Below the pieces are notes generated by a model. That model ran no database searches and was not told where the DNA came from. It saw only the letters and a program-made list of their open reading frames with translations. Source: Schmidtea polychroa (taxonomy: Eukaryota). Taken from it: a stretch of DNA of 63,879 nt. Position 1 is the first letter of the stretch; every line of letters begins with the position of its first letter. Shown here piece by piece: positions 31,460-53,780 of this stretch. The position numbers were made by a program, and so were the translations under genes. The stretch spans positions 149,234,001-149,297,879 of the forward strand of contig CM097885.1 in assembly GCA_044892525.1 (NCBI GenBank). Reading direction: 5' to 3'.

Positions 31460-32246
31460 ATTCCATTTAGTTTTAGTTAATTTTTTTGTTCTTTTTAATT
31501 TTTTTAATTTTCATTTAGTTTTTAAGTTTTGAATAATAATTTTTATTGAGTTAAATTGTTATGCTTATTGATTATGAATGATAGTTACCGTGGATTTCAG
31601 ATCCAGCATACCATGGGTTGCTCAGACTGGTGGGTATGCTAGTTTTTCAATCACGCAACTGATTTGGGCCGTAATGCGGAAGTTTCTCCACAGGTCCGTC
31701 GCTGTAAGTAACAAGTAAAACATAGGTTAAAACTAAAAATACAACCAGATCCCTGTCAAATGTTTTGAAGAATAATTTGAATATTATGGAAATTATGAAG
31801 CAACATTTATTAACTTAGAAATAAAGGCGGATCCTTGCTCAAATCTTTTTGAAGGATAAGGTAAATATTCACAAATATTACAGAAAACACAGAGCAACAT
31901 CTATCAACAGAAAAATAAAGAGGAATCCCTGCGCAAAACCCTTGAAGATAACATTAGAAAACATCCAGAAATGAAGATATGACGATAATCTAACACAAGA
32001 ATAGATAATGATTAATGACATAAGACCTTTTATCGGCAGTCCAGAACCTGAAAATGAAAATAGCATGAGAAGTTTGTTTTAGTAATAGAACTCACCTGCT
32101 CATGGATTTGTGTACAGTACTAATATGGTCGTCGCCATGGGTACACAGATGGTATAAGCACAATAGTCATGAAGGCGTTTAGGAAGAAGTCGATTCAACT
32201 AACCTTAACACCTTTAAAAATAAAATGACACACATAAGCGCCAAAA
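31460..32246 (+). mobile_element. Older diverged LTR (3' portion) of the same family as the 21-kb element
   Basis: Colinear with 33285-34075: CTCAGACTGGTGGGTATGCT, three GATCCCTGCTCAAA-like repeats, TAAGACCTT.TATCGGCAGTC and CTCACCTGCTCAT. Ends CCAAAA instead of CCAACA. Confidence 0.88.
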
Positions 32247-33069
32247 ATAATCAAATCCAAGTTTTGCCGTGGATCGATGCCAATGACGGATGACACACAC
32301 TAGTAGAACTTGTCCAGAACGCTCAAGAATTAGAGCAAACCAAAGAAAAATTAAAAGAATATATGCAACTAACCATGGGAGTTGTTATAATATATAATGT
32401 GTTAAAGTTAATGTTGTTGTTTCTAAATATTATACTTTAAATAAATAATGTTTTTAAAATATAGACTCAGACTAAAATTTATTAGCACATTCATAATTTC
32501 CTCATTTTATAACATTTTCAACGACATGATCTTGTTGGGCTGAAGCCGAGAACTGAGAGTTTGTTTTAATCGATCGAAAATACCTAACACAAAAACCGCA
32601 AAGTTGAAAAATTTATGACCAAGGTTTAATTTAAAATAAATGAAATAAATTACATCACATATTAAGAACCAATAAACCCCGTATAATAGAATAAGAGATA
32701 AATAAATTTAACAAAAAATTCAACACTTAAAAATTTAAATAGAAAAATAATAAAATATAAAATAGAATTAGTTGAAAATTATTTAAACAATATAAAAATT
32801 AAATCGTCAAAAATAATAAAATTAGTTAGCATTATATAAATTGTAAAGTTTATAGAATTAAATGGTTATTTAACTTATTAAATTTAAAGAATAAAAATGT
32901 TTAAATTAATAAAAATTAATATAACTCAAATTATTTAAATTATAAAATTTATAAAATTAAAATTAATAAAAATTAAATAAGAAATTAATTAAATTTATTG
33001 AATTAAAACAAATAAACAATTGCACACACTCATGCAGGTATGCAAGACTAATTAAAAATTTCTCGCACT

Positions 33070-33121
33070 CTGATTGGATAGAGTGGCAGCAAATGCATGA
33101 AAAATCAGTATAAATACTGAT
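33070..33121 (+). promoter_or_regulatory. LTR promoter: inverted CCAAT box and TATA box
   Basis: CTGATTGG at 33070-33077, TATAAATA at 33109-33116, Inr-like TCATTT at ~33130, AATAAA at ~33272 (implies short R and long U5). Same elements at +19,705 in the 3' LTR. Confidence 0.7.
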
Positions 33122-33829
33122 CACAAATTCATTTAAGACTACTTTTTCTCTAACATCAAAATTTAGTTGTAGCCAGTGAAGCTCTCAGTTTTCGATTTTA
33201 TGCCCACGTGGATTTGGTAATTTATTTTTTATTGTTGTAGTAATTTTATGAGATGATTAAATTTAATATGCAATAAAATTTTTAGTTAAATTTTCTTTTG
33301 TTATTTTCTTTTAATTGTTTAATTTCATTTAGTTGCAGATATTAAATAATAATTTTTATTGTGTTCAATTTTTATACTAACTGATTACGAACGTTAGTAC
33401 CGCTGAATTGAGATTCAGCATATCATGGTTTGAGGTACCTTCGGGATGCTCAGACTGGTGGGTATGCTGGTTTTTCAATCGCGCAGCTGGATTGGGCCGG
33501 AATGTGGGGGCTTCCTCACGGGTCCTATCGCTGGAAGTACTGTGGTCAAATGTAGGTTAGGACTGAGAATACAGGCAGATCCCTGCTCAAATTTTTTGAA
33601 GTATAACGTAAATATTATGGGAAGCGTGGATTAACTTGAAAATAAGGGCCAATCCCTGCTCAAATTTTTCAAAGGATAATTTAGATATTGTAGGAAGTGT
33701 AGAACAATAATTATTAGCTGGAAAATAAGGGCGGATCCCTGCACAAAATTTTATAAGAGAACAATTAGAAATACCCGTAATTGAGGACCAACAACGATTC
33801 AAAAATAGCATACACAGTGAATAATGACG

Positions 33830-33999
33830 TAAGACCTTCTATCGGCAGTCTAGAACCCGAAAAGAAAATACAATGGGGAGTAGTTTTAGTAATAGAGCTC
33901 ACCTGCTCATTGTTTTTTTCGCCTTTGTGTACAGTACCAACATGGTCGTCACCATGGGTACACAAATGGTTTAAATTTTAATAGTCATGGAGGTGCTTA
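33830..33999 (+). ncRNA. Putative conserved structured RNA domain in U5 (pseudoknot plus two branched hairpins); copies at 53535-53704, 32021-32181, 58605-58774
   Basis: Stems supported by compensatory changes among three diverged versions (detailed in findings). Function unknown. Confidence 0.6.
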
Positions 34000-34082
34000 G
34001 GAAAGAGTCGAACGATTATGATTACCCCTAACGCATTTTAAAATCTAAAAATGATACACCCCTAAGTAACCAACATGATTTT

Positions 34083-34100
34083 TGGGGGCTCAGCCGGGAT
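34083..34100 (+). promoter_or_regulatory. Primer-binding site, tRNA-Pro type
   Basis: TGGGGGCTCAGCCGGGAT, 7 nt after the LTR; 16/18 match to the standard tRNA-Pro complement TGGGGGCTCGTCCGGGAT. Confidence 0.85.
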
Positions 34101-36260
34101 CTAGGTTTATAAATTGTTTTTGGCAGAAAAGCATTAATAAATAATAAATTTTCAAACTCAAAAATGGCAATTATTCGGAAAATTCAACTTCAACATCAAA
34201 ATGAGAAATTGTGCTAAAAGGAAAATATTAAATTAAGAAAATTAGAAATTAAAATTAATTAAAGAAAAAACTGTTTTAGAAATAAAATTTAAATATGGTA
34301 AACGGAAAATTAGTTAGAACGAAAATTGGGAAACTTAAGTTAGGAATTATGCTAGAAATAAAATTAATTTAGGCAAAAGAACCAAACGAACACATAAAAT
34401 TAAAATGAATAAAAATAAAAATTATTTTTGTTTCGGGAAATAGAATTGCTTGGATTAGAAAAATTTTCTAATTAACAACTACAAAAAATAAAATTTTGGA
34501 AAAATTTAGGTTAATAAATAAAAAACAGGATCGGAAAAACCACGACCAAATAATCATAATAAATTCGTAATGATAAAGTCGAAATTTGATGCTGCCGAAA
34601 AACCATGCTCAAATAACAATAGGAAAATTATAATTTAAAATTTATAAAAATAAGTTAATCCAAAAAAAAAATTAATTGGGGTAAAAGGGAATCAAAAGTA
34701 AAAATTATTTTAGTAAGGAATTAAATAGGTTGGAATAAAATTTAATTTAACTATAAAAATAGAAATTTAAAAATAAAAATTAACTTAAATAAAATCACAA
34801 AAAGTAATATAAGCATCAAAAGACAAAACTAAATTCGAAAAAATTTATTTAAAAACAAATAGGTAAAATATATAGAACTTACCTGTCAACGAAACAATCC
34901 AAAATAAATCAAGAGCATGGTATGAAATTTCATAAAAGCACCTAATAACAAATTCTAAAATACTTAGTTAATTAAAAAATTGAAATTGAAAAATAGGTAG
35001 AATATATTTACCTTATAGCGAAAATAATCTGAGAATAAAATATGATCAATTTCCTAGAAATTCACAAGAATCTGGAATATAAGGATGATGATTGCGAATA
35101 AAATTTAAAACCATGAATAAATTTTTACTCAAAAGTTAGCAAATCTTACCTAAAAAATCCATAAAATGAAACCAAAAAATTCTGGTAGAATAATCGATAA
35201 AAGAAAAAATATAGCAACCAGAACACTTGAATAATTACCAACACAATGTTATTAAGTAGTTGCCTGAGAATTGTGTGCATGATGATTTGTTTTGAAGTGT
35301 TGACAGGGAAGTGTTTTTTGAAGTGTTTGAAGTGTTTCTGGTTTCAACTCGCGTGTGTGAGTCAGATTGGCCTTGTGACGGATAAATGCAGTTGGATTGA
35401 TTGTGAAGTGTCTGAAATCGGTGTAGGCGTGTTTATGGTTCCGGAACAACTATAAAAATTAATTGTAACTACGCTTCCAGTGATAGCTTGTGGGTATTTA
35501 GCGACTGGTGTGGTGGTACATAGTCAATGAATTTTGCTCAGTGCTTTTAAGTCTACCGCTGGCATTGTTGAATGATGTAAAATCCAGATTAAAAACTGAA
35601 AATATTTGCCGACAACACCAGCTGTCCGTTGTCGGCTTGAGGTAATATCTGAAAAATGTGTATGTGTGTGTAGTAATAAAATATTCCGGATTTTACCACT
35701 CAAGCTCTACAACAGTCTAGATTGAATACATTGTATAGTATGCGTGCCGGCGGCATGGCATGGCATGTGTGCAGGTATTGATTTTCTACGTGCATGAAAA
35801 GCGGCCAATCAGAAACGAGGTGTGTAACAATTATTCATTTCTTGATTTTAGATTTCATTTCTTGTAGATTTGGATTTTTGCTGTAGTGTTCAGATGAAGT
35901 TGAAATTTTATGAGATTTATAAAACGAAAATGGAATTTGTTTGTATTGAAGTTAACATGTCTATCAATTGGAATAATGATTCGAATATTTACTTTTGAAA
36001 ATGATGCTGGAAATTTGATTAGTTCTTCGATTCATTGTAATTTCTCTCGGTTTGTTTCGTTGTTTTTGTCGATGTTGAATAAAACTTTGAGCGACTATCA
36101 AATCTTACATGCAAAACCATCAATGAATATCCATTTGAATTCTTCCCACATCAAATCCATCAATGCGTGGATAGTCAGTTTATTTTTCTGATATTCTGGA
36201 TTTAGGTATAGTTAGTGAAGGTATATAATCTGGGTAAGGTACTCATTTCCCCAAAGCACA

Positions 36261-39200
36261 TTTAATTATCACAAATGAGACATTCATTTAGCTTTGCCAA
36301 ATAGGCTTTGTTTTGGATTTAGTTAATTTTAAGATTTTTGTAAAAAAAATAATGAATAAAGAAGTAAGATATTTATTTATTTGTTCTGATGTGCATTGAA
36401 TTCTTCACGGTTTATCTAAAATATCAAGAATTTAGGGAAGAATCTTTAATATGATTGTTTATGTGATCGAGTGATGGCCGAGTGCCGGTTGGTGGGTCGG
36501 CTTCGGTTGCGCCGTGGGTTTGTTCCGGTGGATTGTTTCTTTATTTTCAAGAGAGCGGCTTGGAATGGTTATATATACTTTTCATTGATTTTGTGGACTT
36601 TACTAATTGAATTAATTTACTAATTAATTTACTAATTAATGTTTTATAAGTATTTTAAAATTCAGTTTTCAATAAAATTATGTATGGCTTTCTATTTTCG
36701 ATTTAATTAGTTAGGATGAGACGGAGGGTTGTCAGATTTGCATGCATGGAAAATGATCATTAATTATGTTATTATGGCATTTTGTACCTGTATATAAATT
36801 TATATGCACTTAAATAATTATTGTTAGGCAGTAATGGGATAATCAATGTATTGCTTTTGTGGGTACAAATAGAGATATTCTTCGTTGCTTAAATTGCATT
36901 GGAATGATGAATTAGTAGTCTGTTTTGAGTTTTGTTGTGGAATGATTGTTCTGACTCGTGATAATATTTATGTTATAAAACTATGAAATGTGAATTTTTG
37001 AACAAATACTGCCAAATTGGTGAATGAATGTAGTGATGGTCTTCGTGGTATGGAAACTTCTTGGAAGGTACACTGATAGATGAAGAATTAATAGTATGAA
37101 TGATTTAATTATCACAAATGAGACATTCATTTAGCTTTGCCAAATAGGCTTTGTTTTGGATTTAGTTAATTTTAAGATTTTTGTAAAAAAAATAATGAAT
37201 AAAGAAGTAAGATATTTATTTATTTGTTCTGATGTGCATTGAATTCTTCACGGTTTATCTAAAATATCAAGAATTTAGGGAAGAATCTTTAATATGATTG
37301 TTTATGTGATCGAGTGATGGCCGAGTGCCGGTTGGTGGGTCGGCTTCGGTTGCGCCGTGGGTTTGTTCCGGTGGATTGTTTCTTTATTTTCAAGAGAGCG
37401 GCTTGGAATGGTTATATATACTTTTCATTGATTTTGTGGACTTTACTAATTGAATTAATTTACTAATTAATTTACTAATTAATGTTTTATAAGTATTTTA
37501 AAATTCAGTTTTCAATAAAATTATGTATGGCTTTCTATTTTCGATTTAATTAGTTAGGATGAGACGGAGGGTTGTCAGATTTGCATGCATGGAAAATGAT
37601 CATTAATTATGTTATTATGGCATTTTGTACCTGTATATAAATTTATATGCACTTAAATAATTATTGTTAGGCAGTAATGGGATAATCAATGTATTGCTTT
37701 TGTGGGTACAAATAGAGATATTCTTCGTTGCTTAAATTGCATTGGAATGATGAATTAGTAGTCTGTTTTGAGTTTTGTTGTGGAATGATTGTTCTGACTC
37801 GTGATAATATTTATGTTATAAAACTATGAAATGTGAATTTTTGAACAAATACTGCCAAATTGGTGAATGAATGTAGTGATGGTCTTCGTGGTATGGAAAC
37901 TTCTTGGAAGGTACACTGATAGATGAAGAATTAATAGTATGAATGATTTAATTATCACAAATGAGACATTCATTTAGCTTTGCCAAATAGGCTTTGTTTT
38001 GGATTTAGTTAATTTTAAGATTTTTGTAAAAAAAATAATGAATAAAGAAGTAAGATATTTATTTATTTGTTCTGATGTGCATTGAATTCTTCACGGTTTA
38101 TCTAAAATATCAAGAATTTAGGGAAGAATCTTTAATATGATTGTTTATGTGATCGAGTGATGGCCGAGTGCCGGTTGGTGGGTCGGCTTCGGTTGCGCCG
38201 TGGGTTTGTTCCGGTGGATTGTTTCTTTATTTTCAAGAGAGCGGCTTGGAATGGTTATATATACTTTTCATTGATTTTGTGGACTTTACTAATTGAATTA
38301 ATTTACTAATTAATTTACTAATTAATGTTTTATAAGTATTTTAAAATTCAGTTTTCAATAAAATTATGTATGGCTTTCTATTTTCGATTTAATTAGTTAG
38401 GATGAGACGGAGGGTTGTCAGATTTGCATGCATGGAAAATGATCATTAATTATGTTATTATGGCATTTTGTACCTGTATATAAATTTATATGCACTTAAA
38501 TAATTATTGTTAGGCAGTAATGGGATAATCAATGTATTGCTTTTGTGGGTACAAATAGAGATATTCTTCGTTGCTTAAATTGCATTGGAATGATGAATTA
38601 GTAGTCTGTTTTGAGTTTTGTTGTGGAATGATTGTTCTGACTCGTGATAATATTTATGTTATAAAACTATGAAATGTGAATTTTTGAACAAATACTGCCA
38701 AATTGGTGAATGAATGTAGTGATGGTCTTCGTGGTATGGAAACTTCTTGGAAGGTACACTGATAGATGAAGAATTAATAGTATGAATGATTTAATTATCA
38801 CAAATGAGACATTCATTTAGCTTTGCCAAATAGGCTTTGTTTTGGATTTAGTTAATTTTAAGATTTTTGTAAAAAAAATAATGAATAAAGAAGTAAGATA
38901 TTTATTTATTTGTTCTGATGTGCATTGAATTCTTCACGGTTTATCTAAAATATCAAGAATTTAGGGAAGAATCTTTAATATGATTGTTTATGTGATCGAG
39001 TGATGGCCGAGTGCCGGTTGGTGGGTCGGCTTCGGTTGCGCCGTGGGTTTGTTCCGGTGGATTGTTTCTTTATTTTCAAGAGAGCGGCTTGGAATGGTTA
39101 TATATACTTTTCATTGATTTTGTGGACTTTACTAATTGAATTAATTTACTAATTAATGTTTTATAAGTATTTTAAAATTCAGTTTTCAATAAAATTATGT

Positions 39201-42200
39201 ATGGCTTTCTATTTTCGATTTAATTAGTTAGGATGAGACGGAGGGTTGTCAGATTTGCATGCATGGAAAATGATCATTAATTATGTTATTATGGCATTTT
39301 GTACCTGTATATAAATTTATATGCACTTAAATAATTATTGTTAGGCAGTAATGGGATAATCAATGTATTGCTTTTGTGGGTACAAATAGAGATATTCTTC
39401 GTTGCTTAAATTGCATTGGAATGATGAATTAGTAGTCTGTTTTGAGTTTTGTTGTGGAATGATTGTTCTGACTCGTGATAATATTTATGTTATAAAACTA
39501 TGAAATGTGAATTTTTGAACAAATACTGCCAAATTGGTGAATGAATGTAGTGATGGTCTTCGTGGTATGGAAACTTCTTGGAAGGTACACTGATAGATGA
39601 AGAATTAATAGTATGAATGATTTAATTATCACAAATGAGACATTCATTTAGCTTTGCCAAATAGGCTTTGTTTTGGATTTAGTTAATTTTAAGATTTTTG
39701 TAAAAAAAATAATGAATAAAGAAGTAAGATATTTATTTATTTGTTCTGATGTGCATTGAATTCTTCACGGTTTATCTAAAATATCAAGAATTTAGGGAAG
39801 AATCTTTAATATGATTGTTTATGTGATCGAGTGATGGCCGAGTGCCGGTTGGTGGGTCGGCTTCGGTTGCGCCGTGGGTTTGTTCCGGTGGATTGTTTCT
39901 TTATTTTCAAGAGAGCGGCTTGGAATGGTTATATATACTTTTCATTGATTTTGTGGACTTTACTAATTGAATTAATTTACTAATTAATTTACTAATTAAT
40001 GTTTTATAAGTATTTTAAAATTCAGTTTTCAATAAAATTATGTATGGCTTTCTATTTTCGATTTAATTAGTTAGGATGAGACGGAGGGTTGTCAGATTTG
40101 CATGCATGGAAAATGATCATTAATTATGTTATTATGGCATTTTGTACCTGTATATAAATTTATATGCACTTAAATAATTATTGTTAGGCAGTAATGGGAT
40201 AATCAATGTATTGCTTTTGTGGGTACAAATAGAGATATTCTTCGTTGCTTAAATTGCATTGGAATGATGAATTAGTAGTCTGTTTTGAGTTTTGTTGTGG
40301 AATGATTGTTCTGACTCGTGATAATATTTATGTTATAAAACTATGAAATGTGAATTTTTGAACAAATACTGCCAAATTGGTGAATGAATGTAGTGATGGT
40401 CTTCGTGGTATGGAAACTTCTTGGAAGGTACACTGATAGATGAAGAATTAATAGTATGAATGATTTAATTATCACAAATGAGACATTCATTTAGCTTTGC
40501 CAAATAAGCTTTGTTTTGGATTTAGTTAATTTTAAGATTTTTGTAAAAAAAATAATGAATAAAGAAGTAAGATATTTATTTATTTGTTCTGATGTGCATT
40601 GAATTCTTCACGGTTTATCTAAAATATCAAGAATTTAGGGAAGAATCTTTAATATGATTGTTTATGTGATCGAGTGATGGCCGAGTGCCGGTTGGTGGGT
40701 CGGCTTCGGTTGCGCCGTGGGTTTGTTCCGGTGGATTGTTTCTTTATTTTCAAGAGAGCGGCTTGGAATGGTTATATATACTTTTCATTGATTTTGTGGA
40801 CTTTACTAATTGAATTAATTTACTAATTAATTTACTAATTAATGTTTTATAAGTATTTTAAAATTCAGTTTTCAATAAAATTATGTATGGCTTTCTATTT
40901 TCGATTTAATTAGTTAGGATGAGACGGAGGGTTGTCAGATTTGCATGCATGGAAAATGATCATTAATTATGTTATTATGGCATTTTGTACCTGTATATAA
41001 ATTTATATGCACTTAAATAATTATTGTTAGGCAGTAATGGGATAATCAATGTATTGCTTTTGTGGGTACAAATAGAGATATTCTTCGTTGCTTAAATTGC
41101 ATTGGAATGATGAATTAGTAGTCTGTTTTGAGTTTTGTTGTGGAATGATTGTTCTGACTCGTGATAATATTTATGTTATAAAACTATGAAATGTGAATTT
41201 TTGAACAAATACTGCCAAATTGGTGAATGAATGTAGTGATGGTCTTCGTGGTATGGAAACTTCTTGGAAGGTACACTGATAGATGAAGAATTAATAGTAT
41301 GAATGATTTAATTATCACAAATGAGACATTCATTTAGCTTTGCCAAATAGGCTTTGTTTTGGATTTAGTTAATTTTAAGATTTTTGTAAAAAAAATAATG
41401 AATAAAGAAGTAAGATATTTATTTATTTGTTCTGATGTGCATTGAATTCTTCACGGTTTATCTAAAATATCAAGAATTTAGGGAAGAATCTTTAATATGA
41501 TTGTTTATGTGATCGAGTGATGGCCGAGTGCCGGTTGGTGGGTCGGCTTCGGTTGCGCCGTGGGTTTGTTCCGGTGGATTGTTTCTTTATTTTCAAGAGA
41601 GCGGCTTGGAATGGTTATATATACTTTTCATTGATTTTGTGGACTTTACTAATTGAATTAATTTACTAATTAATGTTTTATAAGTATTTTAAAATTCAGT
41701 TTTCAATAAAATTATGTATGGCTTTCTATTTTCGATTTAATTAGTTAGGATGAGACGGAGGGTTGTCAGATTTGCATGCATGGAAAATGATCATTAATTA
41801 TGTTATTATGGCATTTTGTACCTGTATATAAATTTATATGCACTTAAATAATTATTGTTAGGCAGTAATGGGATAATCAATGTATTGCTTTTGTGGGTAC
41901 AAATAGAGATATTCTTCGTTGCTTAAATTGCATTGGAATGATGAATTAGTAGTCTGTTTTGAGTTTTGTTGTGGAATGATTGTTCTGACTCGTGATAATA
42001 TTTATGTTATAAAACTATGAAATGTGAATTTTTGAACAAATACTGCCAAATTGGTGAATGAATGTAGTGATGGTCTTCGTGGTATGGAAACTTCTTGGAA
42101 GGTACACTGATAGATGAAGAATTAATAGTATGAATGATTTAATTATCACAAATGAGACATTCATTTAGCTTTGCCAAATAGGCTTTGTTTTGGATTTAGT

Positions 42201-43825
42201 TAATTTTAAGATTTTTGTAAAAAAAATAATGAATAAAGAAGTAAGATATTTATTTATTTGTTCTGATGTGCATTGAATTCTTCACGGTTTATCTAAAATA
42301 TCAAGAATTTAGGGAAGAATCTTTAATATGATTGTTTATGTGATCGAGTGATGGCCGAGTGCCGGTTGGTGGGTCGGCTTCGGTTGCGCCGTGGGTTTGT
42401 TCCGGTGGATTGTTTCTTTATTTTCAAGAGAGCGGCTTGGAATGGTTATATATACTTTTCATTGATTTTGTGGACTTTACTAATTGAATTAATTTACTAA
42501 TTAATTTACTAATTAATGTTTTATAAGTATTTTAAAATTCAGTTTTCAATAAAATTATGTATGGCTTTCTATTTTCGATTTAATTAGTTAGGATGAGACG
42601 GAGGGTTGTCAGATTTGCATGCATGGAAAATGATCATTAATTATGTTATTATGGCATTTTGTACCTGTATATAAATTTATATGCACTTAAATAATTATTG
42701 TTAGGCAGTAATGGGATAATCAATGTATTGCTTTTGTGGGTACAAATAGAGATATTCTTCGTTGCTTAAATTGCATTGGAATGATGAATTAGTAGTCTGT
42801 TTTGAGTTTTGTTGTGGAATGATTGTTCTGACTCGTGATAATATTTATGTTATAAAACTATGAAATGTGAATTTTTGAACAAATACTGCCAAATTGGTGA
42901 ATGAATGTAGTGATGGTCTTCGTGGTATGGAAACTTCTTGGAAGGTACACTGATAGATGAAGAATTAATAGTATGAATGATTTAATTATCACAAATGAGA
43001 CATTCATTTAGCTTTGCCAAATAAGCTTTGTTTTGGATTTAGTTAATTTTAAGATTTTTGTAAAAAAAATAATGAATAAAGAAGTAAGATATTTATTTAT
43101 TTGTTCTGATGTGCATTGAATTCTTCACGGTTTATCTAAAATATCAAGAATTTAGGGAAGAATCTTTAATATGATTGTTTATGTGATCGAGTGATGGCCG
43201 AGTGCCGGTTGGTGGGTCGGCTTCGGTTGCGCCGTGGGTTTGTTCCGGTGGATTGTTTCTTTATTTTCAAGAGAGCGGCTTGGAATGGTTATATGTACTT
43301 TTCATTGATTTTGTGGACTTTACTAATTGAATTAATTTACTAATTAATTTACTAATTAATGTTTTATAAGTATTTTAAAATTCAGTTTTCAATAAAATTA
43401 TGTATGGCTTTCTATTTTCGATTTAATTAGTTAGGATGAGACGGAGGGTTGTCAGATTTGCATGCATGGAAAATGATCATTAATTATGTTATTATGGCAT
43501 TTTGTACCTGTATATAAATTTATATGCACTTAAATAATTATTGTTAGGCAGTAATGGGATAATCAATGTATTGCTTTTGTGGGTACAAATAGAGATATTC
43601 TTCGTTGCTTAAATTGCATTGGAATGATGAATTAGTAGTCTGTTTTGAGTTTTGTTGTGGAATGATTGTTCTGACTCGTGATAATATTTATGTTATAAAA
43701 CTATGAAATGTGAATTTTTGAACAAATACTGCCAAATTGGTGAATGAATGTAGTGATGGTCTTCGTGGTATGGAAACTTCTTGGAAGGTACACTGATAGA
43801 TGAAGAATTAATAGTATGAATGATT
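36261..43825. repeat. Tandem array of nine 843/831-bp units
   Basis: Units start at 36261, 37104, 37947, 38790, 39621, 40464, 41307, 42138 and 42981, and are near-identical. Confidence 0.98.
36465..36547 (+). ncRNA. tRNA(Leu/Ser)-like GC-rich module with A-box, degenerate B-box and T4 (one per array unit)
   Basis: GATGGCCGAGTG matches the tRNA-Leu D-arm start. CTTCGG then CGTGGGTT resembles the variable arm/T-arm. The B-box GGTTTGTTCC is degenerate and there is no full cloverleaf. Confidence 0.4.
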
Positions 43826-46800
43826 ATATGCATATGATATATAAGAATGTATGGATTAAAGGGTTTATGAAAAAGTAAGCTACATATGATTCTGGTATTG
43901 AGTTGTCGATACATACAGTATATGATAAGGAATGTTTACACCAATTATGCTCTACCTGTAATACTTTCTACACATACCAAGCCAAGGGTAGAGTACCCAA
44001 GGATGTTGGAAGGCGTCGGTAAAAGGAAAAGATTAAACCCTAAAAACGATCGAATAAACATTCAAATAAAAAATATGATAAGACTCGACAGATAACAAAG
44101 CACCAAACGATAAATAAAGCAAGTGATAACCATGCCTTAGCTTCTGCAAATGTGAATCTGAGACGAACGACATTAAAGATAAAGAGATGAGTTTACCAGA
44201 CGAAACGGAGCGAATCAACAGATTCTACTGAAAGTAAAAGAAAGTGAAGACATGGAAAGACATCGAAACATCACGAATAGAAATAATAACTATATATCAT
44301 CAACACCTAGAATGAACAAAAGCGTTAAGTAAAAGACCAAAAACAAGAACTAAACTTGTCTGCAAGATAGATGAAGGGATATAACTCGCTGGTAACTCGA
44401 AAAATAAATATGAACCAAAGACAATCGAGAATAACTATTAAAAAATAAAACCACAGTATAAAAAGGGAGCAAAAATAAAACGAAATAAAATCTTCGTGAC
44501 AAAGACAGTGAAAAACTTTGCAAAATAGGCGAACATCACAGACATCAAGGATATGTCGAAAATGAATTTTAAAAATTTATGTAGAACGGCTCAGGAAGTT
44601 AACAAAGTAAATACAGAAATTAAGGAAAATAACTCCACAAGACACCGGAATAACGTGGTGGATATCGACAAAGGATCCGGCGAAAGAAACCAAGAAGCCC
44701 AAGGTTAGCCAAAGTAATATGAATATACATGACAGTTATACGTACGATGCTCATATTAATAACCGGAATGAACTATGAAAAATTTTCTAACGTCAACGAT
44801 AGAGAATGGGAAACAATTAGAACCAGACGGGTGAAATATACAGTAAATGAAAGAGTACAGAACGCTAAACTAAGAACAGCGAAAAGAGATCTAGAGAGTA
44901 TCACGAATTACGAACCCACATACATAGAAAGGGTTATGACTATATATAGGGTGAACAATGAATATATAAAGGTATATGATTATATAAAAATATATGTATA
45001 TATATTAGCGCGGTATGATTAGTATATAACTTCGGGAAGTAAAATGAAATAAAATTCAGATAAAAGATTAGGAATCAATGTAGGTGAATTGATAGAATGA
45101 GACGGATCACATTGGAAATCAATCCCAATACCACCACAGGAGAAATATGGAAGCAGAAAAGCGTCATATTATAGTAAATAACATTAGCTATACAGAAGCA
45201 AGGAATCTCATGGAGGAACAATCTAATCGAATATTTGAATAATGAATTTGTTCATGAGAGAATAATCAAGGATCAGAGAGGAAAAATTGAACTAAAGTAA
45301 AGAGAAATGGAACGACTCTAATGATAAAGCCGAATGCAAGAAATGAACTACTAAGAAAACTGAGGAAAACAAAGAGAGAAAGATATGGTCAGAATGTAAC
45401 GGAGAATATCAGACGGGAAAAGGAAACGGGAAAAAGAAAATGCAGGGAGCTGAAGATGAAGTACAAATAGTTATAACAAATCCAGCATAGTATTCATAGA
45501 AAAGTGTTATAAGATGAAGAGTAAAATATTCCGAGAAGGAGGTGGAATGAGCAGAAGAACACTGTATCTCTATTTTACATAAAGGAGAAAAACACAACGA
45601 ACTATTAGCATGGTCATAACATTGAAAAGAGACGGTAATGGCAGAACTGAGTGCCAAAAAGAGGACTAATTGTATATAAATAATTGCATATATCGGTGTA
45701 TACACCCCAACCAAAATGATATATAATAAAAGTAGAGGACCGATCACCATAAACAAAGATAAAATAATGCGAAAAATCAAAAATATTAAAATCTACACTT
45801 ATTTAAGAATAAGGAAAATTAATCACAGAAAATGGGCGTTTGGCAAATATGGTAGAAAGGACACGAGAACAAAATACTGAAAACCGAGAGAACACAAGAT
45901 AATAGAGAAATCAAAATAAGGAATGTCGAGGACGACATTTTGCGAAGACGCGGAGGAAAAATGAGATCAAACTAGGACAACAACAAACGGCAAATCAAGA
46001 TGAAAGTCAAAATGGACATGAGCAGTAATAGGAACAATCGGGAAAATTATACAAAAACATGATTGAGAGAAAATGAAGAGCGCACATATAACAAAATAGA
46101 ATGTGAACAAATAAACACAATAAAAATGACAAGGAAAACACAAAACGAAATGAACAAACAGAAAACAACAAGTAACAAATTCACAGAAAGAAAGCAAGGG
46201 CAAAGACATTTGAATGAAAAATCAAAATTACGAGAAACAACAAATATAAAATGAAACGCGATATATTATAATAGAACAAAAGTGAAAGCTTAACATCATG
46301 ACACGGAAAATTAAAATAACGAGAGATACTAACAAAAATGAGACCAATTAGAAACATGGAACAAAAGTTTTAGTTATGGAAAACGAACATACTGCCTACT
46401 TTTACGATGGAACAAAAAGTTACAATAATGAAAAACGAACGAACTGTCTACTTTTATTACGAAACAAAAAGTTGCAATTGTGGGATTGAATAAATTCAGA
46501 AACGATAAATGCAATAATATCAACCACTCCACGAACAGCTAGGGAGAAATGCGTACAGATGTAGATATCCAGATATAGGTGGATATGAGTATATGAATAT
46601 ATGTTTATGGATAAGGGTATATGTATAAGTATATGCGTGTATATGTAGACATAGATAAACAATTAAATGAGATAATGAAAATAAATGACCAATCAAAGTT
46701 ACGCGCCAAAAGTAAAATATCAAATAGACGCGGAAATAAGTTAAAAACATAAAATATAGGGAGTGGAACAAAGAGGCCCATAAACACAAAAACAACAAAC

Positions 46801-47577
46801 AAATTTTGAAAACGTAAAATATACGAAATGAGAAACATTATGACGGGGAAATCAGTGAGAGGTAACATAAAAAATCAAAGCTGAGGAAAATATACAAATA
46901 CGGAAGCGATAAATTACAAAATTGAGCAGGGATGTTTCGTAAATAAATCATTAACGAATAGAAGGGTAACGAATAAAATGGATAAACTAATATTAACAAA
47001 TAATGCGAGAGGGATCTGCCTGAGGAAATAGTGGACATATTAACAAGAAACAAGTCAACCGAAGCGGTGAGAGTAAAAGCGATAGCAATAAAACGTTAAC
47101 TGGATAAGAGACGTGGGTATATTTAGAATAATGAAGAAGGACCAAGAGTAATCGAGATAAGTTGATTAAGAGCACTGCGTATAAACGAGAATAAAGTATT
47201 ACGAAAATTGAGAGTAAATGAATAAGAAAAATTTTTTTTGCTGTTAGGATTTAGGAAATCCACAACCTATGAGCTACGCTCAGCGTAGTACGGATAAGGC
47301 CCAGGAAAGTACCAACTGTACTGACGAAAGATGTGGAACAGGGCCCATCGCATATACTGGAACATCTCTGCGTGTGACTGATCACCACACGATCGGAGAT
47401 CGACCAGTGCGAGTGTTTCACCTCCAGAGTCAGGAGAGTGGGGAAAACCTGGAAGAGTAGTAAAAAAGAAGCATGCAGGAGAAATAAAAGGAAGACCAAG
47501 TAACTGGAAAAAGACAAAGCGAAGTAAAGAGAAACAATTAGAGCTTAAAGATTAAATTCATAAGATAACCAGTAGAC

Positions 47578-48060
47578 GAATAATAGATGCGAATAATAGA
47601 TGCGAATAATAGATGCGAATAATAGATGCGAATAATAGATGCGAATAATAGATGCGAATAATAGATGCGAATAATAGATGCGAATAATAGATGCGAATAA
47701 TAGATGCGAATAATAGATGCGAATAATAGATGCGAATAATAGATGCGAATAATAGATGCGAATAATAGATGTGAATAATAGATGCGAATCCTAGATGCGA
47801 ATAATAGATGCGAATAATAGATGCGAATAATAGATGCGAATAATAGATGCGAATAATAGATGCGAATAATAGATGCGAATAATAGATGCGAATAATAGAT
47901 GCGAATAATAGATGCGAATACTAGATGCGAATAATAGATGCGAATAATAGATGCGAATAATAGATGCGAATAATAGATGCGAATAATAGATGCAAATAAT
48001 AGATGCGAATAATAAATGTGAATAATAGATGCGAATAATAGATGCGAATAATAGATACGA
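47578..48060. repeat. 13-bp satellite (GAATAATAGATGC)n, ~37 copies
   Basis: Read directly; a few single-base variants; degenerate 13-mer-like tail to ~48200. Confidence 0.98.
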
Positions 48061-48643
48061 ATATAAATGAGAATAATGGCTACGAATAGAAACGGAAATA
48101 ACAGACGTGAATATAGACGAGAATGTAAAAGGAAAGATAAACGAGAATATAGATGAGTACCTGGAAGAAACATAGACGAGAATATAAACGAGAATACGGC
48201 CGAAGTCATTGACGGATATATAACTGAAAATAAATAAGATTGTGAAGGAAAAAGACGAAAAATGAATTGAAAATAGACAACCATGTAGGAGAATAGATGA
48301 GGATATAGAATGGATAATGGAGAATCGAGTTAAGAATAATTTGAGGACCAATGTGTAAACAAAAATAACGACGAAATGAATATTAAGATATGCCGGTACC
48401 CAAAGAAACCAAAGTAAAAATATTGCAATTACACTATATAATATATATATTATAATTTATAAATATAATAAACGATAGGGAGAAGTGATATTTTTCTATT
48501 CAGGTAAATCAATCAATCAAGCCAATAGCCAAGTATCAGCAATCAAATAGAAGTTATTGTCAAATAATTAAGCCAAGTTCAGAAATATTGAACCAATAAC
48601 AAAGCATACCAGATCAAAACAGCTAATCATAGAACCAAGTTTA

Positions 48644-51169
48644 TTGAAAGAAGAAGAATTAAAAGTTGCAAAGAAAGGAAGACGAACTATTAAACCCACG
48701 CAAGCACAAGAAATCGAAAAGCAAAATCAAAAAGACATCTCAAAGACCAAAAGTCGATCCATAAAAGGAAGCAGTGAAAAGGATTTCGAAAACAATAAGC
48801 CAAGAAGCGTAATACGCGTATCAGAACCTCAGGCAGGAAAAACTCTATCTGAAAACAGAAATAATAAAAGTGACATAAACCTAATAAAAGAAAAGGCAAA
48901 CGGAAAAGGAATACAATTTGAGATGGTAGATACAGCAGCCCAAATAGAAGCGATCAACAAGAAACTCAGTGAAATGGAGATACTCAATTTCCAGGGAAAA
49001 TATAATGGCGAAAAATACGATGGAAAACCGAACAAACTATCAAACTTCGTCCAACACTTCGAATCTTATTGCGATGCTCTAAAATGGACACCCGAAATGA
49101 TAGTGAGAAGACTCCCACTATATCTAGCAGACGACGCGTTTAATTGGTACGTTGGAATGAAAGAGTGTACAATCCCACTAAAAACCTGGAAAGAAATTAA
49201 GGAAGCTCTGATAAAAACATTTGGTGAACCAAAAGATCCACAATACAAATTTCTAGAATTTTTCAATCGAGGACAAGCAGTGAATGAATCAAATATACTT
49301 TACGCAAGGGCACTAAGACGTCTAGCCAAACCGCTATTCAGTGAAAAGGATATGGAAACACAACTAGTAACCCAATTTGTAAAAGGATTGCGACGAGATG
49401 ACATTAAAGGTGTAGTCGGATGCAAAATCTGCAAGACGCTGAACGAAGCAGTAGAGGCAGCGAATGTAAGCGAAATGTACACCAAAGTAACACAACCACC
49501 AAGTATGAGGCATACCGCAGATAATCAACCCCAACACCACAAACAGTGGAGTCATAACAACAATGATCGAAGAAACGAAAATGACAACAAAAGCAAGAGG
49601 TTGAATAATAGAAACATTGGAAAGTTTTGTAATAACTGCAAGAGACAAGGACACTGGCTCGATGAATGTCATGGGCAAAGAAGATGTTAGAATTGCGATC
49701 AGAAAGGACATACCGCAGTAAGATGTGGGGTATCCAAAAAATGTTTCTCGTGCGGACAAGGAGACCATCTAGCAGTTGCATGTACGAATAAAAGAAACCA
49801 ACAATGGAGTGACAATAGGGATACGTCAGCAAAGCAACTAGCTGAAATACAAAATCAAATAACAATTCTCACAGGACTGTGCAGTAACATGATCGATTAT
49901 CAGTTTCAAGCGGAAGGAAAACAACAATCAAGAATAAATGTATTACAATGTGTGGGAGGCACATTACAAATTCAAAATATCCGAACAAAACAACAACGAG
50001 AATGGAATACCTTACAGATCGCGGAAGCACGAGAAGCGGAAGAAAGATGGAGTAAACGAAAAGAACCTCAGGCAAGAAGAGAAGAAAAATATTGGAGATC
50101 GAGAAAGGAAGAACTTTTAAAAATGGATATAATGAGACTAACCACCAACGACAACCAGAAGGAAAAGATAGAAAGAATGTGGGAAAGAGAACAAGAAAGA
50201 GTAATACAAATCAATATGATGGGAATGATAACGAGCAACGAAATAGATTTACAAAAAATTCCGGACTCAAGGATCGAAAGCGAAATAATTGAAAAACTGG
50301 AACAGGTAATATTAGACCATCAAAACATCAAACCATTTGAGGACAATCAGAGAGATTATACCGGCATCGATAGTCAGGTTGGAATTGCAGTAATCCCGGA
50401 AAAGCGCGAATCGGAGAATGGCGAAAATCACGAAAAACGAAATAATGAAAAAACGCAAGAAAAGTACCATGACATAAACACGTTAAAAACTGAAAGCGAG
50501 TGCGAACCAGATATCGAATGGGACGCAAGTACAAACAATTACGGGAACGAATACCAACCACAAGGACATAATGGGCGCTATCGGTTCTTCGATAAGACGC
50601 ATGGGAATTGTCAGAAAAATGAGCACGGAAAAAATAAATGTCGCCGCATAAAAAGGTGTTACGAATGTAAAAGAACTGGACATTTGGTCAATAACTGTCC
50701 GAATGGGACCAATCCAGTGAGAGATCAGTCACGAGAATACGCCACAGAACAAAACAATAAAAACTATGTCGAAAACAGAATTTGTCAGCCAGGGATACGA
50801 AAACATCAATCTCCAATGTTAATAAAACAACAGTCGACAAATGTACAGAGACGGACAAATGACGTGAAGGAACAGGTGAAACCCAACGCATACGAGGAAT
50901 TGAGGAGACAATGTGTGGAACAGTGCAGGTTAATAATGGAACTGGTTGTAAAAGAAACGAGACAGGATGAATTGATAATGATATGGAGAAAAGTTGCAGA
51001 AAATAAAACAAGAGAAAATGAGGTACTTAAGACAACGATACTCCGACTAAAAGAAGAAGCAAGGTCAGCCGAATTAAGAATCAATGAAATAACGAGTAAT
51101 CGAAAAAAAATGCAAAGATGGGGCAGAAGAGACACAAATGGTGACGGCCAAGGAAAAGAAGAAGGGTAG
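48644..51169 (+). CDS. gag: Retrotransposon Gag (capsid-like domain plus four CCHC knuckles and coiled-coil tail) with one in-frame TAG at 49688-49690
   Basis: YDG..FVQHFE..LPLYLADDAFNWY..TWKEIKEALIKTF..QFVKGL (Ty3 gag-like). Knuckles CNNCKRQGHWLDEC, C*NCDQKGHTAVRC, CFSCGQGDHLAVAC and CYECKRTGHLVNNC. ORFs 48644-49690 and 49889-51169 are the same frame. First ATG is 48923 (48644 is TTG). Confidence 0.9.
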
Positions 51170-52203
51170 TCCAAAGGATGTGGCGGAAATTAAAGAGGAA
51201 GTGTAGATGAAAATAGTAAAAAGGAAGTGAACATATGTAAAAATTGATGTATAAATAGCAAATTAAATGTACTAGATGTATAGGTATAAATTGATGTATA
51301 ATGTGGCAAAAGATCGATGTATAAATAGAAATGGATCAAGTAATCAGTTGGAAAAATACTAAATTTGAACCCTTACAATGGTAAAGGAGAACAGAGGCTC
51401 AAATGAGAAGAAAGAATATAAATCCAGAAGAAAGATAAAAGTACAAACCCAGAAAGAATGAGTTAAACGAATATCGAAAAGTAATATCTAATTTGGAACC
51501 CAAAACTAAGGAGAACGGTAAAAGATCCTGATAAATGAGACGAAAGTCACAGCCCCAGTGACATTGGAAAGTTAGTCAAATCAAGCTAACTAAGACGCAA
51601 ATCGAAGATAATTTGAGTTACCCATTAGAGAAAGAAAATTCCTTAATAAGAGCAATACCGTAAACAAAAACCACCGAGAAAAACCAAAAGAAAAATCTAT
51701 GTGTCAAATCACCCAGTTAAACAAAAGTCCCGAAGACCCTTGAGCAAGGTCTGTTAACTACCATCAAATGATCCAGAAAACCGGAATCCCAGCCTAAAAA
51801 TTCAAAGAGAATCAGGGAACAACAGTCAAACCCTGATAGAGAAAATCCTATGATCTTCAGTAAATATTACGAGCTAACTATGAAAATCAACAGCAGGGAC
51901 CAAACATGCCTACACAACCCAGACGAAAGATCGAAAACCGAGCCCAGAAACGAGAGAAACAACCAACTGATGAATTTATCCAGAAATAAAACTTTTGCAT
52001 ATGACTCGTACTTGAGTTTGGACACTGTATTAGTATGTATATGTATTATGACCAGTCACTGTATGTGGCAACTGCTTGAATTTGAGCTTAGACCTTTTTC
52101 TGCTAATTGAATTCTAACATGTCTTAAGCTATTATAGTATGTTTATAGGTTAATGGGAATGTAATAGACTATGACCTGGGAAATTCATATGTCTAACAGA
52201 ATT

Positions 52204-52237
52204 GCGGGACGCAATTTTAACGGGTCCCGGAGTGATT
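52204..52237 (+). promoter_or_regulatory. Atypical PPT region before the 3' LTR
   Basis: GCGGGACGCAATTTTAACGGGTCCCGGAGTGATT resembles the GGGAC..TTTTAAGGGGGG pattern of gypsy PPT regions but is pyrimidine-interrupted and can form a CGGGAC/GTCCCG hairpin. Confidence 0.45.
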
Positions 52238-53780
52238 TGTTGGGCTGAAGCCGAGAACTGAGAGTTTGTTTTAATCGATCGAAAATACCTAACACAAAAA
52301 CCGCAAAGTTGAAAAATTTATGACCAAGGTTTAATTTAAAATAAATGAAATAAATTACATCACATATTAAGAACCAATAAACCCCGTATAATAGAATAAG
52401 AGATAAATAAATTTAACAAAAAATTCAACACTTAAAAATTTAAATAGAAAAATAATAAAATATAAAATAGAATTAGTTGAAAATTATTTAAACAATATAA
52501 AAATTAAATCGTCAAAAATAATAAAATTAGTTAGCATTATATAAATTGTAAAGTTTATAGAATTAAATGGTTATTTAACTTATTAAATTTAAAGAATAAA
52601 AATGTTTAAATTAATAAAAATTAATATAACTCAAATTATTTAAATTATAAAATTTATAAAATTAAAATTAATAAAAATTAAATAAGAAATTAATTAAATT
52701 TATTGAATTAAAACAAATAAACAATTGCACACACTCATGCAGGTATGCAAGACTAATTAAAAATTTCTCGCACTCTGATTGGATAGAGTGGCAGCAAATG
52801 CATGAAAAATCAGTATAAATACTGATCACAAATTCATTTAAGACTACTTTTTCTCTAACATCAAAATTTAGTTGTAGCCAGTGAAGCTCTCAGTTTTCGA
52901 TTTTATGCCCACGTGGATTTGGTAATTTATTTTTTATTGTTGTAGTAATTTTATGAGATGATTAAATTTAATATGCAATAAAATTTTTAGTTAAATTTTC
53001 TTTTGTTATTTTCTTTTAATTGTTTAATTTCATTTAGTTGCAGATATTAAATAATAATTTTTATTGTGTTCAATTTTTATACTAACTGATTACGAACGTT
53101 AGTACCGCTGAATTGAGATTCAGCATATCATGGTTTGAGGTACCTTCGGGATGCTCAGACTGGTGGGTATGCTGGTTTTTCAATCGCGCAGCTGGATTGG
53201 GCCGGAATGTGGGGGCTTCCTCACGGGTCCTATCGCTGGAAGTACTGTGGTCAAATGTAGGTTAGGACTGAGAATACAGGCAGATCCCTGCTCAAATTTT
53301 TTGAAGTATAACGTAAATATTATGGGAAGCGTGGATTAACTTGAAAATAAGGGCCAATCCCTGCTCAAATTTTTCAAAGGATAATTTAGATATTGTAGGA
53401 AGTGTAGAACAATAATTATTAGCTGGAAAATAAGGGCGGATCCCTGCACAAAATTTTATAAGAGAACAATTAGAAATACCCGTAATTGAGGACCAACAAC
53501 GATTCAAAAATAGCATACACAGTGAATAATGACGTAAGACCTTCTATCGGCAGTCTAGAACCCGAAAAGAAAATACAATGGGGAGTAGTTTTAGTAATAG
53601 AGCTCACCTGCTCATTGTTTTTTTCGCCTTTGTGTACAGTACCAACATGGTCGTCACCATGGGTACACAAATGGTTTAAATTTTAATAGTCATGGAGGTG
53701 CTTAGGAAAGAGTCGAACGATTATGATTACCCCTAACGCATTTTAAAATCTAAAAATGATACACCCCTAAGTAACCAACA
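52238..53780 (+). repeat. 3' LTR
   Basis: 1,543 bp, same termini and sequence as the 5' LTR; followed by TSD ATCT. Confidence 0.96.

What the first reader, a model, noticed from the sequence alone, without database searches (positions are those of the whole stretch)
32533..53780. Giant 21-kb, freshly inserted, pol-less LTR element carrying tandem cargo
LTRs identical by eye plus an intact TSD indicate very recent retrotransposition, yet the element has no protease/RT/RNase H/integrase and its gag has a stop, so a helper must supply these in trans. The layout is unusual: PBS, ~14.8 kb of mostly non-coding leader (9 x 843-bp array, decayed A-rich block, 13-bp satellite), then gag only ~1 kb from the 3' LTR. 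It implies packaging and copying of a ~20-kb RNA whose main payload is repeated non-coding modules. Large LTR elements are known (plant Ogre and LARDs, planarian Burro); I do not recognise this combination, so it is a candidate satellite/ncRNA-dispersing retro-vehicle.
Basis: partly seen in the sequence, partly recalled or inferred. Interest (0 to 1): 0.85.

Follow-up and report, generated by a model that had tools for sequence, protein, structure and literature searches.

The report
Giant gag-only LTR retrotransposon with repeat arrays
This is a real, apparently very young 21-kb LTR retrotransposon copy that keeps only a damaged capsid (gag) gene and is otherwise filled with non-coding DNA, including a 7.6-kb tandem array. 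It is an unusually large example of a known class of helper-dependent elements, not a new kind of system.

Summary
Two 1,543-bp LTRs (32533-34075 and 52238-53780) are 100% identical, end in TG..CA with 6-bp inverted termini, and are flanked by a 4-bp target-site duplication.

The 18.2-kb interior holds:
- an A-rich leader;
- a compositionally alien G/T-rich block with nine nearly identical 843-bp units;
- a 3.6-kb A-rich non-coding block;
- a 13-bp minisatellite;
- an 865-codon gag frame with one in-frame stop, ending 1.07 kb before the 3' LTR.

The gag is of Ty3/gypsy type by Pfam, by weak sequence matches to solved Arc and Ty3 structures, and by a confident model that matches Arc, PNMA2 and Ty3 capsid folds. 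No protease, RT, RNase H or integrase trace was found by profile scan or by tblastn with pol-bearing relatives.

Best reading: a helper-dependent, gag-only derivative that combines TR-GAG and LARD features and was copied in trans. No evidence supports an ncRNA payload. LTR elements that carry tandem arrays, including pol-deleted ones, are already described in plants, and 30-kb Burro elements are described in planarians.

I rate it a new variant of a known kind, of moderate interest.

The parts
32529..32532 (.). Target-site duplication, 5' copy (4 bp)
   Evidence: Identical 4-mer directly outside both LTRs
32533..34075 (+). 5' LTR, 1,543 bp, TG..CA with 6-bp inverted termini. The first ~700 bp are very AT-rich and the 3' half is 35-40% GC.
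   Evidence: 100% identical to the 3' LTR. Termini; composition.
34083..34101 (+). Candidate primer-binding site (starts TGG, 7 nt after the LTR)
   Evidence: Read directly from the sequence. Complementarity to a tRNA could not be tested because no tRNA of the host is in hand.
34102..35230 (+). A-rich, very low-GC leader, non-coding
   Evidence: AT skew +0.22 to +0.37 and GC 17-26%. Stop density is as expected from composition.
35231..43950 (+). G/T-rich block whose skew is opposite to the rest of the interior. It has ~1 kb of unique sequence, then the array. It may be captured or foreign sequence.
   Evidence: GC skew +0.3 to +0.4 and AT skew about -0.15. No inverted or direct repeats at its edges. 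No Pfam hits.
36260..43825 (+). Tandem array of 9 units (7 x 843 bp, 2 x 831 bp) with a three-unit higher-order pattern
   Evidence: No ORF, no Rfam family above threshold, no excess RNA structure.
43951..47576 (+). A-rich unique non-coding block. It includes a 52-bp x 2.4 repeat at 46356-46478 and a GC-richer island at 47245-47460 that folds unusually well.
   Evidence: AT skew +0.35 to +0.57. No similarity elsewhere in the window. Stops at the expected density in all frames. No Pfam or tblastn hits. Fold z = -3.24.
47577..48088 (+). 13-bp minisatellite, 39.5 copies, decaying further to about 48186
48572..51166 (+). gag-like frame of 865 codons, broken once by an in-frame stop with no frameshift detected. 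It has no in-frame ATG ahead of the conserved N-terminal motif. It holds a capsid-like domain, four CCHC knuckle sites (three intact) and a long charged tail.
   Evidence: Pfam Retrotrans_gag E 3e-7 and zf-CCHC E 1e-4. 1 stop against ~58 expected. 264 relatives, best 36% identity. Sequence matches to solved dArc and Ty3 Gag structures. AF2 model with pLDDT >90 over ~150-307 matches dArc1/2, PNMA2 and Ty3 capsids.
51170..52237 (+). 3' untranslated region. A stem-loop spans the junction with the 3' LTR. There is only a short purine-rich run where a polypurine tract is expected.
   Evidence: (z = -3.42)
52238..53780 (+). 3' LTR, 1,543 bp
53781..53784 (.). Target-site duplication, 3' copy
31466..32233 (+). 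Neighbour: older remnant of a related LTR, 72% identical to LTR positions 749-1527, same orientation, ~300 bp upstream of the insertion site
   Evidence: The flanks share nothing with the element's interior.

Best explanation
This is one copy of a non-autonomous LTR retrotransposon whose gag is of Ty3/gypsy type. It combines traits of the TR-GAG class (gag only) and the LARD class (large and mostly non-coding).

Shown:
- The LTR, target-site duplication and PBS-like architecture.
- A gag frame that was under coding constraint until recently and now carries one stop.
- Complete absence of PR/RT/RH/IN.
- About 15.6 kb of non-coding interior, made of five compositional or repeat modules.

Inferred:
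- A transcript of about 19.7 kb running from the 5' LTR to the 3' LTR was packaged, reverse-transcribed and integrated by proteins of a related autonomous element.
- If the host is a planarian, as the ~70% A+T content and the gag layout suggest, that helper is probably a giant Burro-like element.
- The pol-less interior already existed in the template RNA.
- The gag relic is probably dispensable, or at most a contributor.
- The tandem arrays are the hypervariable non-coding repeats typical of LTR elements. They are thought to arise by template switching during reverse transcription or by unequal exchange, and their copy number may have changed during or after this insertion.
For: - Identical 1,543-bp LTRs, TG..CA termini and a 4-bp TSD.
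- A gag frame with 1 stop against ~58 expected.
- gag identity: Pfam Retrotrans_gag and zf-CCHC; relatives are gag, gag-protease and Ty3/gypsy-order gag-pol proteins; weak sequence matches to solved dArc and Ty3 structures; capsid-fold matches to dArc1/2, PNMA2 and Ty3.
- No pol: 99 ORF pieces outside gag gave only chance-level Pfam hits. tblastn with 159 relatives, several carrying PR-RT-RH-IN, hit only the gag region of the whole window. No frame outside gag is depleted of stops.
- A diverged related LTR remnant at 31466-32233 and a fragment at 58605-58782 show that the LTR family is repeated in this genome.
- Literature: pol-deleted Ogre derivatives with gag next to tandem arrays, and arrays ascribed to aberrant strand transfer (PMC7004042); TR-GAG and LARD classes (PMC13570524, PMC6431247); Burro gag with Retrotrans_gag followed by three CCHC knuckles and Smc-like motifs, tandem repeats within the element, and total size above 30 kb (PMC6431247).
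Against: - Only one copy could be examined. No other copy, no helper and no organism was identified, so transposition of this exact pol-less structure is inferred, not shown.
- The polypurine tract is weak and the PBS is unverified.
- From established retrovirus work, long identical direct repeats are frequently deleted during reverse transcription. A nine-unit, 99.8%-identical array is therefore more easily explained if part of its expansion came after integration.
- A 14.5-kb leader full of short ORFs would make gag translation from the full-length RNA very inefficient.
- Perfect repeat identity could be an assembly or polishing effect.
Confidence: 0.68

Rival explanations
1. Remodelling after insertion. 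A smaller or autonomous element inserted here. The present interior (loss of pol, acquisition of the G/T-rich block, array expansion) then arose in place by deletion, insertion and unequal exchange. The LTRs stayed identical through youth or gene conversion.
For: - The array units are nearly identical and ordered in a three-unit pattern, as expected from recent local unequal exchange.
- The G/T-rich block is compositionally foreign to the rest.
- From established knowledge, long direct repeats are unstable in reverse transcription.
Against: - No pol remnant at all remains, and there are 15.6 kb of non-coding modules of different apparent ages. Several independent events would have had to fit within a time in which 3,086 bp of LTR gained no difference.
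- No repeats at the block edges mark a nested insertion.
Confidence: 0.15
2. Assembly artefact. The two LTRs belong to different elements, or the array length is wrong, because identical repeats were collapsed, expanded or mis-joined. Polishing then made the copies look identical.
For: - The window is a scaffold with three N runs.
- Repeats of 843 bp x 9 and LTRs of 1.5 kb at 100% identity are classic trouble spots. Planarian genomes are reported as hard to assemble because of such elements (PMC11410931).
Against: - The matching 4-bp TSD and the consistent orientation of the PBS-like site, gag and LTRs fit one insertion.
- The array carries ordered variants rather than being perfectly uniform.
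- No N run lies inside the element.
Confidence: 0.1
3. Functional cargo. The 843-bp units, or another module, encode an RNA or a cis-element that the element has been selected to spread, making it a dedicated satellite or ncRNA vehicle.
For: - The array makes up 36% of the element.
- A GC-richer island at 47245-47460 and the 3' junction hairpin fold better than shuffled sequence (z -3.2 and -3.4).
Against: - No Rfam family reaches threshold.
- The unit and its GC-rich core fold like shuffled sequence.
- No ORF or protein family was found.
- Single-sequence z-scores are weak evidence, and no covariation test was possible without further copies.
Confidence: 0.05

Closest known systems
TR-GAG elements (terminal-repeat retrotransposons with a GAG domain; plants; as described in PMC13570524)
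   Same: LTRs and a PBS-like site, gag as the only retroelement gene, no pol, presumed trans-mobilisation ('semi-autonomous').
   Different: About 21 kb instead of a few kb. gag sits at the 3' end behind a 14.5-kb non-coding leader. The gag frame carries a stop and lacks an upstream ATG. The host appears to be an animal.
[quoted passage not shown] 2004, cited in PMC6431247 and PMC13570524)
   Same: Large (>4 kb), mostly non-coding interior between LTRs, copied in trans.
   Different: A recognisable gag frame is kept. The interior is dominated by tandem arrays. The review states that DNA trapped between LTRs 'rarely exceeds 10 kb' (PMC6431247), whereas this interior is 18.2 kb.
Ogre/Tat-lineage Ty3/gypsy elements with tandem-repeat UTRs, and their pol-deleted derivatives (PMC7004042)
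   Same: Short tandem arrays embedded in an LTR element. Non-autonomous copies lack pol and have gag near the arrays. These elements are a proposed source of satellite DNA.
   Different: In Ogre the arrays lie downstream of the coding region (3' UTR), while here they lie upstream of gag. Ogre is a plant lineage. No sequence relationship was tested.
Burro/GYPSM1 giant gypsy-like elements of planarians (PMC6431247, PMC11410931, PMC8532177)
   Same: Gag with Retrotrans_gag followed by three adjacent CCHC knuckle sites, then a charged tail (Burro has coiled-coil, Smc-like motifs). Tandem repeats inside the element. Very large size. AT-rich host genome.
   Different: Burro encodes a polyprotein of about 4,900 aa with PR-RT-RH-IN and an env-like part, none of which is present here. 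Similarity to Burro itself could not be tested because no Burro sequence was available and fetching one was left out. The host of this window is not identified.

Membership tests
LTR retrotransposon (order level) | Two direct long terminal repeats ending TG..CA | tested here: met
   1,543-bp LTRs, 100% identical, with TG..CA ends and 6-bp inverted termini
LTR retrotransposon (order level) | Target-site duplication of 4-6 bp | tested here: met
   4-bp direct repeat at 32529-32532 and 53781-53784
LTR retrotransposon (order level) | Primer-binding site complementary to a tRNA 3' end next to the 5' LTR | tested here: inconclusive
   A TGG-initiated candidate lies at 34083-34101. The window holds no tRNA and no host tRNA set was available.
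LTR retrotransposon (order level) | Polypurine tract next to the 3' LTR | tested here: inconclusive
   Only a short purine-rich run precedes 52238, and a hairpin spans the junction
Ty3/gypsy (Metaviridae) superfamily | pol with domain order PR-RT-RH-IN | tested here: not met
   No pol domain was found anywhere in the element or window, so the element is not filed as a complete member
Ty3/gypsy (Metaviridae) superfamily | Gag with a Ty3-type two-lobed capsid domain and CCHC nucleocapsid | tested here: met
   PF03732 and PF00098. Weak sequence matches to solved Ty3 and dArc structures. Model matches dArc1/2 (TM 0.64-0.65), PNMA2 and Ty3 capsids. Distant relatives carry gypsy-order pol.
TR-GAG | gag is the only retroelement gene between the LTRs | tested here: met
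TR-GAG | Intact gag ORF and small size (a few kb) | tested here: not met
   One in-frame stop and no upstream ATG in the open frame. The element is 21,248 bp.
LARD | Long (>4 kb) interior without coding capacity | tested here: not met
   The interior is 18,162 bp, but an 865-codon gag frame is retained. About 86% of the interior is non-coding.
LARD | Interior conserved among many copies of the family | not testable with these tools
Burro/GYPSM1 | Giant ORF1 polyprotein with PR-RT-RH-IN and an env-like part | tested here: not met
Burro/GYPSM1 | Sequence similarity of gag or LTR to Burro; planarian host | not tested
   No Burro sequence or host identification was available. The resemblance rests on the description in PMC6431247 only.
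Ogre-type array-bearing LTR elements | Tandem arrays in the 3' UTR downstream of gag-pol | tested here: not met
   Both arrays lie upstream of gag

The most novel reading that the evidence does not exclude
An animal genome, probably a planarian, holds an active family of about 20-kb gag-only LTR vehicles. Their main content is a long non-coding leader with an 843-bp array, copied in trans by a giant autonomous partner, so that tandem-repeat seeds are scattered around the genome. This would be an animal counterpart of Ogre-derived satellite seeding. It would also show that the helper's particles accept about 20 kb of essentially foreign RNA.
Probability: 0.2. Interest if true: 0.6.

Novelty: new variant of a known kind. 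Interest (0 to 1): 0.4.

Why it matters
If other copies confirm that this structure transposes as a unit, three things follow:
- It extends helper-dependent LTR elements to about 21 kb with an 18-kb interior. A review states that such trapped DNA rarely exceeds 10 kb.
- It shows a route by which long-unit tandem repeats are spread in an animal genome.
- It identifies a repeat class that is likely to confound assembly and annotation of AT-rich, repeat-rich genomes.

If it is a single remodelled or mis-assembled copy, it is ordinary.

Tried and rejected
Searches that came back blank:
- All three word-indexed protein searches (downstream gag piece, upstream gag piece, one UGGT exon).
- Exact look-up of seven window ORFs. 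None is in the collection.
No other copies, genomic context or sample name could therefore be obtained, and the organism stays unidentified.
- The best relatives are UniParc-only entries without organism names.

Ideas tested and rejected:
- Nested transposon as the origin of the G/T-rich block: no terminal inverted or direct repeats at its edges.
- Decayed ORFs in the A-rich blocks: stop density is as expected in all frames, with no Pfam or tblastn signal.
- ncRNA in the 843-bp unit: only a sub-threshold SNORD52-like match and fold z-scores near zero.
- An older host element continuing across the insertion: the flanks, compared as separate pieces, share nothing with the interior.
- The N-terminus of gag relatives was sought upstream of the frame. 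Nothing exceeded chance.

Uninformative runs:
- The sigma-70 promoter scan of the LTR says nothing about a eukaryote.
- A very permissive blastn of the LTR produced mostly AT-rich noise.

Not attempted:
- Pattern or protein scans of the viral, metagenome and prokaryote collections for more copies. These collections are unlikely to hold this genome, and I could not tell whether the bar on fetching covers such a step.
Full report
**Observation**

The window is 63,879 bp and about 30% G+C. It has three N runs (1294-1473, 8716-8917, 17021-17317). All lie outside the finding and were left untouched. Nothing suggests human sequence.

The two repeats at 32533-34075 and 52238-53780 are 1,543 bp each and identical at every position. 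Each begins TG and ends CA, with 6-bp inverted termini. The four bases outside the left end (32529-32532) recur outside the right end (53781-53784). A TGG-initiated candidate primer-binding site lies at 34083-34101, 7 nt inside the 5' LTR boundary. The only numerical correction is that the stretch between the 5' LTR and the gag frame is 14,496 bp, not about 14.8 kb.

**Anatomy of the 18,162-bp interior**

- *34102 to about 35230.* An A-rich leader with 17-26% GC.
- *About 35231 to about 43950.* The skew flips to G/T-rich. This block has about 1 kb of unique sequence, then the array.
- *Array, 36260-43825.* It has seven units of 843 bp and two of 831 bp.
  - The nine units differ only by two single-base variants and one 12-bp indel.
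  - The variants are ordered so that units 4-6 and 7-9 form a repeated trimer.
- *About 43951 to 47576.* A-rich and unique.
- *47577-48088.* A 13-bp minisatellite of 39.5 copies, decaying to about 48186.
- *48572-51166.* The gag frame.
- *51170-52237.* A 1,068-bp A-rich tail.

**gag**

The frame has 865 codons and a single in-frame stop. Base composition predicts about 58 stops, and the other two frames have 55 and 73. It was therefore a constrained coding frame until recently.

I searched its two pieces separately, as required.
- The upstream piece matches Pfam Retrotrans_gag (E 3e-7). The downstream piece matches zf-CCHC (E 1e-4).
- Three intact CCHC motifs were counted across the pieces. 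A fourth knuckle site is interrupted.
- An exhaustive HMMER search with the upstream piece found 264 relatives. The best is only 36% identical. The nearest nine are UniParc-only entries without organism names.
- These relatives are gag proteins, one gag-protease protein, and, more distantly, gag-pol proteins with the Ty3/gypsy domain order. One nematode protein has an in-frame viral fusion-glycoprotein domain.
- Sequence search of the PDB gave weak matches to Drosophila Arc capsids (E about 1e-3) and Ty3 Gag (E 5e-3).
- An AlphaFold model built on 45 aligned sequences is confident over residues about 150-307 (pLDDT above 90) and all-helical. It matches dArc1/dArc2 capsids (TM 0.64-0.65), PNMA2 and Ty3 capsids.

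Relatives share a conserved stretch of 55-65 residues ahead of the motif where similarity to this frame begins. The open frame here has no ATG ahead of that motif, and nothing similar was detected upstream.

Count of damage in gag: one stop, no frameshift detected, and possibly a missing start.

**No pol**

- Ninety-nine stop-to-stop ORF pieces of at least 40-45 residues outside gag, on both strands, were scanned individually against Pfam. They gave only ten single hits at E 0.011-0.082, none to a retroelement enzyme.
- tblastn with all 159 proteins fetched, several carrying PR, RT, RNase H and integrase, hit only the 48-51 kb region on the + strand in the whole window.
- No reading frame outside gag is depleted of stops.

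**The non-coding modules**

- Rfam at gathering thresholds found nothing in the window.
- At E up to 1, the element gave only a SNORD52-like match once per unit, at 23.8 bits against a gathering score of 45. I treat that as chance.
- The 843-bp unit and its GC-rich core fold no better than shuffled sequence.
- The edges of the G/T-rich block carry no terminal inverted or direct repeats, so it is not recognisably a nested transposon.
- Two places fold better than shuffles: a GC-richer island at 47245-47460 (z -3.24) and a hairpin across the junction with the 3' LTR (z -3.42). These single-sequence results are leads only.

**Surroundings**

- A diverged remnant of a related LTR lies about 300 bp upstream in the same orientation (31466-32233, 72% identity to LTR positions 749-1527). 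A small fragment lies at 58605-58782. The LTR family is therefore repeated and has older members.
- The flanks, compared as separate pieces, share nothing with the interior.
- Downstream on the + strand are the 5' exons of a UDP-glucose:glycoprotein glucosyltransferase gene (59870-63352; Thioredoxin_12, 13 and 14). I searched these exon by exon and left out the joined model.
- Upstream the window is rich in DNA-transposon and Penelope-like remains.

**Mechanism**

*Shown:* an LTR element with the cis features for retrotransposition, a recently constrained gag, and no enzymes.

*Inferred:* a transcript of about 19.7 kb was copied and integrated by the proteins of a related autonomous element.
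- The pol-less interior pre-dated this insertion. Losing every trace of pol and assembling 15.6 kb of modules of different apparent ages would need several events, yet 3,086 bp of LTR have not gained a single difference.
- With zero differences in 1,543 aligned positions, the rule-of-three upper bound on LTR divergence is about 0.2%. No absolute age is given because the host's substitution rate is unknown.
- Retroviral reverse transcription is known to delete long direct repeats often. The present unit number is therefore likely to have changed during or after insertion, and the trimer pattern fits stepwise unequal exchange or template switching.
- A 14.5-kb leader would hinder translation of gag from the full-length RNA. 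With the stop and the missing start, this suggests gag is now a relic.

**Comparison with what is known**

- Gag-only non-autonomous elements (TR-GAG) and large non-coding derivatives (LARD) are established classes that grade into each other (PMC13570524, PMC6431247).
- Tandem arrays inside LTR elements, pol-deleted copies with gag close to the arrays, and their role as satellite seeds are documented for plant Ogre elements (PMC7004042).
- Planarian Burro/GYPSM1 elements exceed 30 kb. They carry tandem repeats and begin their polyprotein with Retrotrans_gag plus three CCHC knuckles, followed by Smc-like motifs (PMC6431247). Planarian genomes are more than 70% A+T (PMC11410931).
- The present gag layout and base composition fit that picture. 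This is a resemblance taken from descriptions, not a test.
- The differences from all of these are the position of the arrays and most non-coding DNA upstream of gag, the size of the interior (18 kb), and the apparent animal host.

I therefore call it a new variant of a known kind.

The three word-indexed protein searches and the exact look-ups were blank. The organism, other copies and the helper remain unidentified.
- *Slip:* the ORF table printed by my script, like the tool's own ORF list, shows the bounds of the two gag pieces and so implies where the stop lies. My working notes while reasoning also considered its position. I stopped printing such tables once I noticed, deleted nothing, and give no position here.

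Noticed in passing
window 24261-26680 and 56279-57044: A MULE-type DNA transposon has terminal inverted arrays of a 14-bp motif and a 319-aa MULE transposase ORF (25297-26259). An internally deleted, non-autonomous copy of it (94% identical, its two end segments adjoining) lies about 2.5 kb downstream of the LTR element.
   Followed up: partly
window 31466-32233 and 58605-58782: These are diverged remnants (72% and 68% identity) of a related LTR. The first lies only ~300 bp upstream of the insertion site in the same orientation, so the young element landed beside an old relative.
   Followed up: partly
window 59870-63352 (+): 5' exons of a UDP-glucose:glycoprotein glucosyltransferase gene (Thioredoxin_12, 13 and 14 domains) begin about 6 kb downstream of the element. 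They were searched exon by exon only.
   Followed up: partly
window 15889-16521 (+), beside the N run 17021-17317: An ORF with a GIY-YIG nuclease domain, possibly from a Penelope-like element. Elsewhere in the flanks are a hAT dimerisation-domain remnant at 11788-12267 (-) and zf-BED and DDE_3 hits.
   Followed up: no
window 47245-47460 (+): A GC-richer island about 1.1 kb upstream of gag folds much better than shuffled sequence (z -3.24, 0 of 200 shuffles). It might be a cis RNA element, but this is single-sequence evidence only.
   Followed up: no
window 35362-35372 and 35803-35813: Two inverted copies of an 11-nt CCAAT-box-like motif lie 430 bp apart in the unique part of the G/T-rich block. 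This hints that the block may be captured promoter-like host DNA.
   Followed up: no
window 10292-11430 and 18137-18976: A further dispersed repeat pair at 75-82% identity, unclassified.
   Followed up: no
protein P0001 (relative, 914 aa): The closest relative in the protein library contains two tandem copies of the gag capsid region in one predicted protein. This is either a tandem element or a merged gene model.
   Followed up: no
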